Below are positions 10,909 through 11,049 of a DNA stretch of 58,573 nt, in pieces. The stretch comes from Octopus bimaculoides (taxonomy: Eukaryota): NCBI RefSeq assembly GCF_001194135.2, contig NC_068986.1, positions 17,089,960-17,148,532 on the forward strand, given 5' to 3'. The translations under genes and the position numbers were made by a program. Position 1 is the first letter of the stretch. Every line of letters starts with the position of its first letter. The notes beneath the pieces were generated by a model that ran no database searches, was not told the origin of the DNA, and saw nothing but the letters and a program-made list of their open reading frames with translations.

Positions 10909-10962
10909 CGTAAACCACGATGTCGCCCAATTCTACTTCTACAAAACTTCAAGTGTACTTAC
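10909..10962 (-). other. 54-nt non-coding exon / recursive-splicing (RS) exon candidate
   Basis: Minus strand: branch-like TACTAAT (10992-10986), tttttttcttttattt, CAG (10965-10963), immediately GTAAGT; second donor CG|GTAAGA at 10908; stops in all three frames. Confidence 0.6.
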
Positions 10963-11049
10963 CTGAAATAAAAGAAAAAAATATAATTAGTAATCCAATT
11001 AAAATAACAACAACAAGAACATCAATATTATCATATTAATAACATATGC

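What the first reader, a model, noticed from the sequence alone, without database searches (positions are those of the whole stretch)
10909..10993. Recursive-splice-site architecture on the minus strand
Minus strand reads TACTAAT-tatatttttttcttttattt-CAG|GTAAGT: a near-consensus branch point, strong pyrimidine tract, and an acceptor fused to a perfect donor. A second donor (CG|GTAAGA) lies 54 nt downstream and the enclosed exon has stops in all three frames. This matches ratchet points / RS-exons described in long Drosophila and vertebrate introns. I do not know of a cephalopod example. A 5'UTR exon is the alternative reading.
Basis: partly seen in the sequence, partly recalled or inferred. 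Interest (0 to 1): 0.75.

Follow-up and report, generated by a model that had tools for sequence, protein, structure and literature searches.

The report
Splice-site look-alike, possible recursive site
A textbook "acceptor fused to donor" splice motif really is on the minus strand, but nothing available shows that this DNA is transcribed, lies in an intron or is conserved, so it is at most an unproven candidate recursive splice site and is more likely a coincidence.

Summary
The minus strand reads TACTAAT, a 17/20-pyrimidine tract, then CAG|GTAAGT. A 54-nt stretch with stops in all three frames follows, then ACG|GTAAGA.

Chance:
- The 8-mer AGGTAAGT alone is at chance (0.5-1.9 expected per window).
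- Adding the pyrimidine tract makes it rare here (0.005-0.024 expected per window).
- That still predicts hundreds of such sites in a gigabase-sized genome.
- It is the only such site in the window.

The anatomy meets every sequence-level criterion of a Drosophila-type ratchet point with a cryptic RS-exon. These include TT at -5/-6, an exon of about 50 nt, and a ratchet-point donor stronger than the exon donor.

The defining contextual criteria could not be tested:
- No coding exon, Pfam domain or homolog was found anywhere in the window.
- Neither strand shows a transcription-like asymmetry.
- No orthologous DNA could be retrieved.
- There are no RNA data.

The site lies in a 1,013-bp contig between two N gaps, with a decayed CA/GT microsatellite on one side and a SINE-like repeat on the other.

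My estimates are about 0.55 for an unselected look-alike, 0.25-0.3 for a working recursive site, and 0.1 for an ordinary non-coding exon. If real, it would be a new member of a known kind. Interest is low to moderate.

The parts
10986..10992 (-). Branch-point-like heptamer TACTAAT (branch A at 10987, 24 nt upstream of the acceptor AG)
   Evidence: Read directly. TACTAAY occurs in the -50..-15 window of only 0.5% of random positions and 1% of acceptor-like sites.
10966..10985 (-). Polypyrimidine tract TATATTTTTTTCTTTTATTT (17/20 Y, 16 T). On the + strand it reads as an A-rich run after AATAAA.
   Evidence: T at -4, -5 and -6 (TTTCAG), matching the TT at -5/-6 reported for 99.5% of fly ratchet points (10.1101/006163).
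10963..10965 (-). Acceptor CAG (last intron base G at 10963)
   Evidence: It is the first AG for about 99 nt.
10957..10962 (-). Donor GTAAGT fused to the acceptor (putative ratchet-point donor). CAG|GTAAGT matches the consensus donor at 9/9.
   Evidence: It is the only AGGTAAGT in the window and the only AG|GTRAG site with a pyrimidine tract.
10909..10962 (-). 54-nt putative cryptic RS-exon or pseudo-exon, with stops in all three frames
   Evidence: Translation. No other copy in the window. No homolog for ORFs across it.
10903..10908 (-). Second donor-like site ACG|GTAAGA (6/9 to the consensus donor CAG|GTAAGT)
   Evidence: GTAAG occurs in +30..+90 of 4% of random positions and 2% of acceptor-like sites.
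10720..10900 (.). Decayed (GT)n/(CA)n microsatellite immediately 3' of the second donor in minus-strand sense. It forms a GT/AC hairpin.
   Evidence: It gives only far sub-threshold mir-466/mir-297-type Rfam hits.
11050..11560 (+). SINE-like repeat with a tRNA-like head (AGCTCAGTG...GTTCGAG), followed by (AC)n at 11575-11622. It is antisense to the motif and starts 58 nt from the branch point.
   Evidence: Partial copies elsewhere in the window. Not called as a tRNA by ARAGORN or Rfam.
10610..11622 (.). The 1,013-bp contig holding the finding, bounded by N gaps 9781-10609 and 11623-12278

Best explanation
The motif is real, but it is most likely an unselected splice-site look-alike: a pseudo-exon with a zero-length-exon-type junction in non-coding, repeat-flanked DNA. 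A T-rich tract happens to abut the 8-mer AG|GTAAGT, which on its own occurs at chance frequency. On the other strand that tract reads as an AATAAA-plus-A-rich run. As DNA the motif does nothing. If the minus strand is not transcribed as part of a pre-mRNA intron, it has no consequence. If it is transcribed, its strength predicts the following (inferred, not shown). U2AF/U2 would bind the TACTAAT-tract-CAG acceptor, and U1 would bind the GTAAGA donor 54 nt downstream, which would define a short exon. After ligation to an upstream exon, the stronger regenerated GTAAGT donor would be used. The 54 nt would then be removed with the rest of the intron and leave no trace in mRNA. In that case the site would behave as a recursive site whether or not it was selected for that role.
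For: The core AGGTAAGT is at chance: 1 observed against 0.5-1.9 expected. The fused motif with a pyrimidine tract is expected 0.005-0.024 times per 49 kb, which implies hundreds per gigabase-sized genome. This agrees with the published background of about 0.1 RP-motifs per 100 kb on non-transcribed strands in 13 animals (PMC2773006).

No gene context was found. The 79 best ORFs (4,126 aa) gave no homolog and no Pfam domain. ORFs over the site gave nothing. A crude exon scan found no convincing exons on either strand.

No strand asymmetry was found. After masking, GC skew is -0.03 and AT skew +0.005, heterogeneous across contigs. Acceptor-like sites number 52 on each strand and donor-like sites 25 against 29.

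No second RP-like site exists in the window. The site lies in about 160 nt of unique sequence between a decayed microsatellite and a SINE-like repeat, inside a 1-kb contig flanked by gaps.
Against: The composite is well formed, and the full set (tract, branch point, fused donor, second donor) is expected only about 1e-4 to 5e-4 times per window. It meets all sequence-level criteria of fly ratchet points, including TT at -5/-6, an exon of about 50 nt and donor-strength order. All invertebrates tested so far show a 4-22-fold excess of such motifs in large introns. A 58-kb window with no exons is what the inside of a very long intron would look like. Absence of evidence here largely reflects missing data: 16% of the window is N, and there is no annotation, no RNA-seq and no related genomes.
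Confidence: 0.55

Rival explanations
1. It is a functional intronic ratchet point with a cryptic 54-nt RS-exon. The window would lie inside a very long intron of a minus-strand gene. The upstream exon is first spliced to 10962. GTAAGT is then regenerated as a 5' splice site and out-competes the weaker GTAAGA donor. The rest of the intron, including the 54 nt, is removed in a second step.
For: All sequence-level features are met: (Y)nNCAG|GTAAGT, TTTCAG as in 99.5% of fly ratchet points, a branch point 24 nt upstream, and a long AG-free zone. The exon is about 50 nt, out of frame and full of stops, and it has a weaker downstream donor (6/9 against 9/9), as in the donor-competition model (PMC8605326). 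The composite is rare by chance in the window. RP motifs are 4-22-fold enriched in large introns of sea urchin, fly, mosquito, bee and beetle. No exon in 58 kb is compatible with a very long intron.
Against: No host gene, strand, transcription, conservation or splicing intermediate could be shown. Vertebrates, which also have large repeat-rich genomes, show no RP enrichment (ratio 0.9-1.5), and no mollusc has been tested. There is only one such site in the window and no strand asymmetry. The site sits between a microsatellite and a SINE-like repeat in a short, gap-flanked contig.
Confidence: 0.27
2. It is an ordinary expressed non-coding exon whose first six bases happen to be GTAAGT. It could be a 5'UTR exon, an lncRNA exon or a poison cassette exon. 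It would use the acceptor at 10963 and the donor at 10908.
For: A strong acceptor and a usable donor lie 54 nt apart. Stops in all frames fit a non-coding or NMD-inducing exon. Expressed exons that begin with a donor-like sequence are known in flies and in hundreds of mammalian genes (PMC8605326; abstract of PMC6224609).
Against: A perfect GTAAGT at the exon start would be expected to compete with, and beat, the weaker GTAAGA donor. No neighbouring exons, promoter or gene were detected. There is no transcript evidence.
Confidence: 0.1
3. The motif is a by-product of a retroposed element on the + strand. The pyrimidine tract would be the antisense of that element's AATAAA/A-rich 3' tail, as in antisense-Alu exonization. 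This concerns origin only. It is compatible with any of the functional readings above.
For: The + strand reads ACTTACCTGAAATAAAAGAAAAAAATATAATTAG, which is AATAAA followed by an A-rich run. The window is rich in SINE-like repeats.
Against: The 150 nt on the + strand before the A-rich run has no other copy in the window. No target-site duplication or element body could be identified. The SINE-like copies in this window end in (AC)n, not poly(A).
Confidence: 0.1

Closest known systems
Drosophila intronic ratchet points with cryptic RS-exons (Burnette 2005; Duff 2015, preprint 10.1101/006163; Joseph et al., PMC8605326)
   Same: Juxtaposed acceptor and donor (Y)nNCAG|GTAAGT. TT at -5/-6. A short (~50 nt), out-of-frame exon with a weaker downstream donor. 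The ratchet-point donor is stronger than the exon donor.
   Different: Fly ratchet points are defined by their position in long introns of expressed genes, by ultraconservation of the SA|SD motif, and by junction, saw-tooth and lariat reads. None of this is known here, and the organism is outside any group in which recursive splicing has been shown.
Vertebrate RS-sites and RS-exons in long genes (Sibley 2015, cited via PMC8605326; Blazquez 2018, PMC6224609)
   Same: An RS-exon is defined first, and a regenerated 5' splice site then competes with the exon's own donor. The genome setting is large and repeat-rich.
   Different: Few fully suppressed intronic sites are validated in vertebrates (nine noted in PMC8605326). 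RP motifs there are not enriched over the complementary strand (PMC2773006), so a motif alone has low predictive value.
Pseudo-exons and 'zero-length exons' (Grellscheid & Smith 2006, as described in PMC2773006); DMD pseudo-exons (PMC7175933)
   Same: Intronic sequence flanked by good splice signals and normally absent from mRNA. Such sequences can arise by chance and may be used at low level or not at all.
   Different: Those examples were found through transcripts or mutations. Here there is sequence only.
Exonization from antisense retroposon tails (Alu exonization; from my own knowledge, not checked here)
   Same: An antisense A-rich tail supplies a polypyrimidine tract in front of an AG.
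   Different: No retroposon body could be identified at this site.

Membership tests
Intronic ratchet point / recursive splice site | [quoted passage not shown] | tested here: met
   17/20 Y, then CAG|GTAAGT at 10985-10957 on the minus strand. It is the only such site in the window.
Intronic ratchet point / recursive splice site | TT at -5/-6 of the acceptor (99.5% of fly ratchet points) | tested here: met
   TTTCAG|. The criterion comes from 10.1101/006163.
Intronic ratchet point / recursive splice site | Cryptic RS-exon of about 50 nt ending in a downstream donor, usually out of frame | tested here: met
   54 nt, stops in all three frames, then ACG|GTAAGA. The criterion comes from PMC8605326.
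Intronic ratchet point / recursive splice site | The ratchet-point donor is stronger than the RS-exon donor, so the exon is skipped | tested here: met
   9/9 against 6/9 matches to CAG|GTAAGT. This is a sequence proxy only. The -3..-1 positions of the regenerated donor would come from the unknown upstream exon.
Intronic ratchet point / recursive splice site | Located on the sense strand inside a long intron of an expressed gene | tested here: inconclusive
   No exon, homolog or domain was found on either strand. There is no skew or splice-signal asymmetry. The window is 16% N.
Intronic ratchet point / recursive splice site | Evolutionary conservation of the AG|GT core above its flanks | not testable with these tools
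   No related eukaryotic genome could be reached. ORF-based fishing, exact-protein look-ups and a metagenome scan all returned nothing.
Intronic ratchet point / recursive splice site | Splicing intermediates: upstream-exon-to-ratchet-point junction reads, saw-tooth coverage, lariats | not testable with these tools
   No RNA data are available.
Ordinary expressed exon (UTR, lncRNA or poison exon) | Presence in mature transcripts, with neighbouring exons of the same gene | not testable with these tools
   No transcript data are available. No neighbouring exon candidates have support.
Transposable-element-derived sequence | Multiple copies, or similarity to a known element | tested here: not met
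   10900-11049 has no second copy in the window. Only the adjacent 11050-11622 repeat has copies. A genome-wide test was not possible.
U1 snRNA gene or pseudogene on the + strand (TACTTACCTG) | Match to the U1 covariance model beyond the 5' end | tested here: not met
   No U1 hit even at E<=1. The sequence after ACTTACCTG is A-rich, not U1-like.

The most novel reading that the evidence does not exclude
This is a working ratchet point in a very long intron of a mollusc, presumably a cephalopod. It would be the first recursive splice site outside insects and vertebrates. It would suggest that cephalopods remove their very large introns stepwise, as flies do.
Probability: 0.25. Interest if true: 0.55.

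Novelty: new member of a known kind. Interest (0 to 1): 0.27.

Why it matters
Recursive splicing has been demonstrated in Drosophila and in vertebrates. Motif enrichment in large introns has been reported for sea urchin and several insects (PMC2773006). No lophotrochozoan has been examined, and the one paper in the library that holds both 'recursive splicing' and 'cephalopod' has each term only once and in neither title nor abstract (I did not open it). Large, repeat-rich genomes with very long neural genes are a natural place to ask a specific question: is stepwise intron removal an ancestral bilaterian solution, or was it replaced, as proposed for vertebrates? One motif cannot answer that. 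It is worth keeping only as a test locus for a genome-wide sense-versus-antisense motif count and for total RNA-seq. If it is a coincidence, the lesson is that a perfect AG|GTAAGT with a good pyrimidine tract is expected many times per large genome and should not be scored highly without context.

Tried and rejected
1. Finding a host gene by homology. The ORF at 3565-3918(+), the ORFs over the site and 79 concatenated candidate ORFs gave no hit. Pfam on ten ORFs gave only sub-threshold noise, and Pfam on the concatenation gave nothing.
2. Fetching orthologous or gap-free DNA. Exact-protein look-ups of four window ORFs found nothing on record. A 27-mer scan of metagenome contigs gave 0 matches.
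3. Inferring the transcribed strand. GC/AT skew after repeat masking and the strand counts of acceptor-like and donor-like sites showed no usable asymmetry.
4. A crude exon-definition scan on both strands gave only SINE-derived or low-complexity candidates.
5. TE origin of the motif. It has no second copy in the window.
6. RNA structure around the site. MFE z-score is +0.38, so nothing unusual.
7. Known RNA families. There were none at gathering score. The sub-threshold mir-466/297-type hits at 10721-10855 are GT/CA-microsatellite hairpins. A U1-pseudogene reading of + strand TACTTACCTG was rejected.
8. tRNA call for the SINE head. There was none, so 'tRNA-derived' rests only on the box-like motifs.
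9. A first simulation script timed out. It was replaced by analytic Markov expectations and empirical sampling.
10. One literature query was badly posed and uninformative. Sibley 2015 is not held in the library.

Full report
**What is there.** The window is a draft scaffold. 9,603 of its 58,573 bases are N, in 24 runs, and the remaining sequence is 36.6% G+C. The finding lies in a 1,013-bp contig (10610-11622) between gaps of 829 and 656 N.

- TACTAAT at 10992-10986, with the branch A 24 nt from the acceptor.
- TATATTTTTTTCTTTTATTT at 10985-10966 (17/20 pyrimidines).
- CAG at 10965-10963.
- GTAAGT at 10962-10957.
- A 54-nt stretch (10962-10909) with stop codons in all three frames.
- ACG|GTAAGA at 10908-10903.

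There is no AG for about 99 nt upstream of the acceptor. CAG|GTAAGT matches the consensus donor at all nine positions. The downstream donor matches at six.

**Surroundings.** In minus-strand sense, the second donor is followed at once by a decayed (CA)n/(GT)n microsatellite (10900-10720) and then by (CT)n at the contig edge. Upstream there are about 58 nt of AT-rich sequence, and then a SINE-like repeat lying on the + strand (about 11050-11560, followed by (AC)n). The repeat's head carries tRNA-like box motifs (AGCTCAGTG...GTTCGAG), and its parts recur elsewhere in the window. ARAGORN and Rfam do not call it a tRNA. The 10900-11049 segment that holds the motif has no other copy in the window. 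The RNA fold of the region is unremarkable (z = +0.38). Rfam gives nothing at gathering score. Its sub-threshold hits are microsatellite hairpins. On the + strand the pyrimidine tract reads as AATAAA followed by an A-rich run. This could be the tail of an old retroposon, but no element body was found.

**Is it more than chance?**
- The core AGGTAAGT is not. It is seen once, against 0.5-1.9 expected from Markov models of order 0-3.
- The fusion of a strong acceptor with GTAAGT is rarer. The window holds 104 sites with >=15/20 pyrimidines plus YAG (22 with >=17/20), and GTAAGT occurs at 2.35e-4 per position. This gives 0.024 (0.005) expected per window.
- Among real acceptor-like sites, 27% have a YTRAY branch-point match in -50..-15, and 7% have GTRAG at +20..+125. 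The full composite is therefore expected about 1e-4 to 5e-4 times per window.
- It is the only AG|GTRAG site in the window that has a pyrimidine tract.
- Scaled to a genome of a few gigabases, chance alone gives hundreds of acceptor-donor fusions and tens of full composites. The accessory features were also chosen after the site was seen.
- An independent published baseline agrees. RP-motif density on the complementary strands of large introns is 0.07-0.12 per 100 kb in 12 of 13 animals (PMC2773006).

**Does it fit the known system?** At sequence level it fits fully.
- Fly ratchet points are tandem acceptor-donor pairs in long introns. Each has a short cryptic RS-exon of about 50 nt flanked by a downstream donor. 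The ratchet-point donor normally out-competes the exon donor, and the exon content is poorly conserved and out of frame (PMC8605326).
- 99.5% of fly ratchet points have TT at -5/-6 (10.1101/006163).
- Here the acceptor is TTTCAG, the exon is 54 nt and full of stops, and the donors rank 9/9 against 6/9.

**What could not be established.** The family is defined by context and use, and none of that was accessible.

*Host gene.* The only sizeable clean ORF (3565-3942, + strand) has no homolog, no Pfam domain and no record in the assembly index. Seventy-nine further candidate ORFs (4,126 aa) gave no hit among 5.8 billion proteins and no Pfam domain. A crude acceptor-ORF-donor scan found nothing convincing on either strand. 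The window is therefore either intergenic or deep inside a very long intron. The latter is where recursive sites are found, but I cannot tell which applies, or on which strand.

*Strand signals.* Base skews after repeat masking are small and heterogeneous (GC -0.03, AT +0.005). Acceptor-like and donor-like sites are equally frequent on both strands (52/52 and 25/29).

*Conservation.* I tried to pull related DNA through ORF translations, exact-protein look-ups and a metagenome scan. All returned nothing. The organism itself could not be confirmed. The composition and repeat load fit a large, repeat-rich animal genome.

**Weighing.** Suppose the source lineage behaves like the invertebrates tested by Shepard et al., with 0.5-2.2 RP motifs per 100 kb of large intron and 4-22 times the antisense density. 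A well-formed site on the sense strand of a large intron would then more likely than not be real. If the lineage behaves like vertebrates (ratio 0.9-1.5), the motif carries almost no information. No mollusc has been tested. I took:
- a prior of roughly one in five that the window is a minus-sense long intron;
- an even bet between the two regimes;
- some credit for the quality of the composite.

On that basis I estimate about 0.25-0.3 for a functional recursive site, about 0.1 for an ordinary non-coding or poison exon, and about 0.55 for an unselected look-alike. These numbers are judgement, not computation.

**Mechanism if transcribed (inferred).** The acceptor and the downstream GTAAGA would define the 54-nt exon. 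The upstream exon would be ligated to 10962. The regenerated GTAAGT donor, being stronger, would then be used, removing the 54 nt with the downstream intron segment. The mRNA would show nothing. Only total or nascent RNA would reveal it.

**Novelty and interest.** The mechanism is well known. At best this is a new member of a known kind in an unexamined phylum. The one paper in the library that holds both 'recursive splicing' and 'cephalopod' has each term once and in neither title nor abstract. I score it 0.27. The useful outcome is a concrete, cheap, genome-wide test: sense against antisense RP-motif density in long introns. That test would decide whether sites like this mean anything in this lineage.

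Noticed in passing
window 3565-3942 (+): A 125-aa ATG ORF in a caacaATGc context. It is A/C-rich, with polyP/polyQ/T-rich low complexity, and ACAG|GTGGCT lies near its end. It has no homolog, no Pfam domain and no record. It could be a lineage-specific first exon or a chance ORF in CCA/CAA repeats. If it is a real + strand gene, the finding would lie downstream of it on the antisense strand.
   Followed up: partly
window 56693-57263: A large foldback (MITE-like) inverted repeat. The arms 56740-56935 and 57019-57214 are 196 nt long and 91% complementary, with an 83-nt spacer. Further outer arms lie at 56693-56746 and 57210-57263.
   Followed up: partly
window 15041-15128 and 16054-16141: The same 88 nt (98% identical) sits on both sides of the N gap 15240-16053. 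This is probably redundant gap edges, an assembly artefact, rather than a biological duplication.
   Followed up: partly
window 11050-11622 (+), with partial copies at 38110-38326, 14045-14169, 39088-39236, 44662-44724, 57683-57717: A SINE-like repeat family with a tRNA-like head (box A/B-like motifs) and an (AC)n tail. ARAGORN and Rfam do not recognise it as a tRNA.
   Followed up: partly
window 10720-10860: (GT)n followed by (AC)n forms a hairpin. It draws far sub-threshold Rfam hits to mir-466/mir-297/mir-5014-type families (41 bits against an 85-bit gathering score). This is a microsatellite artefact, not a miRNA.
   Followed up: yes
whole window: 16% of the window is N, in 24 runs. Microsatellite density is very high ((CA)n, (CT)n, (TA)n). 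No coding exon or TE protein domain is recognisable in 58 kb.
   Followed up: yes
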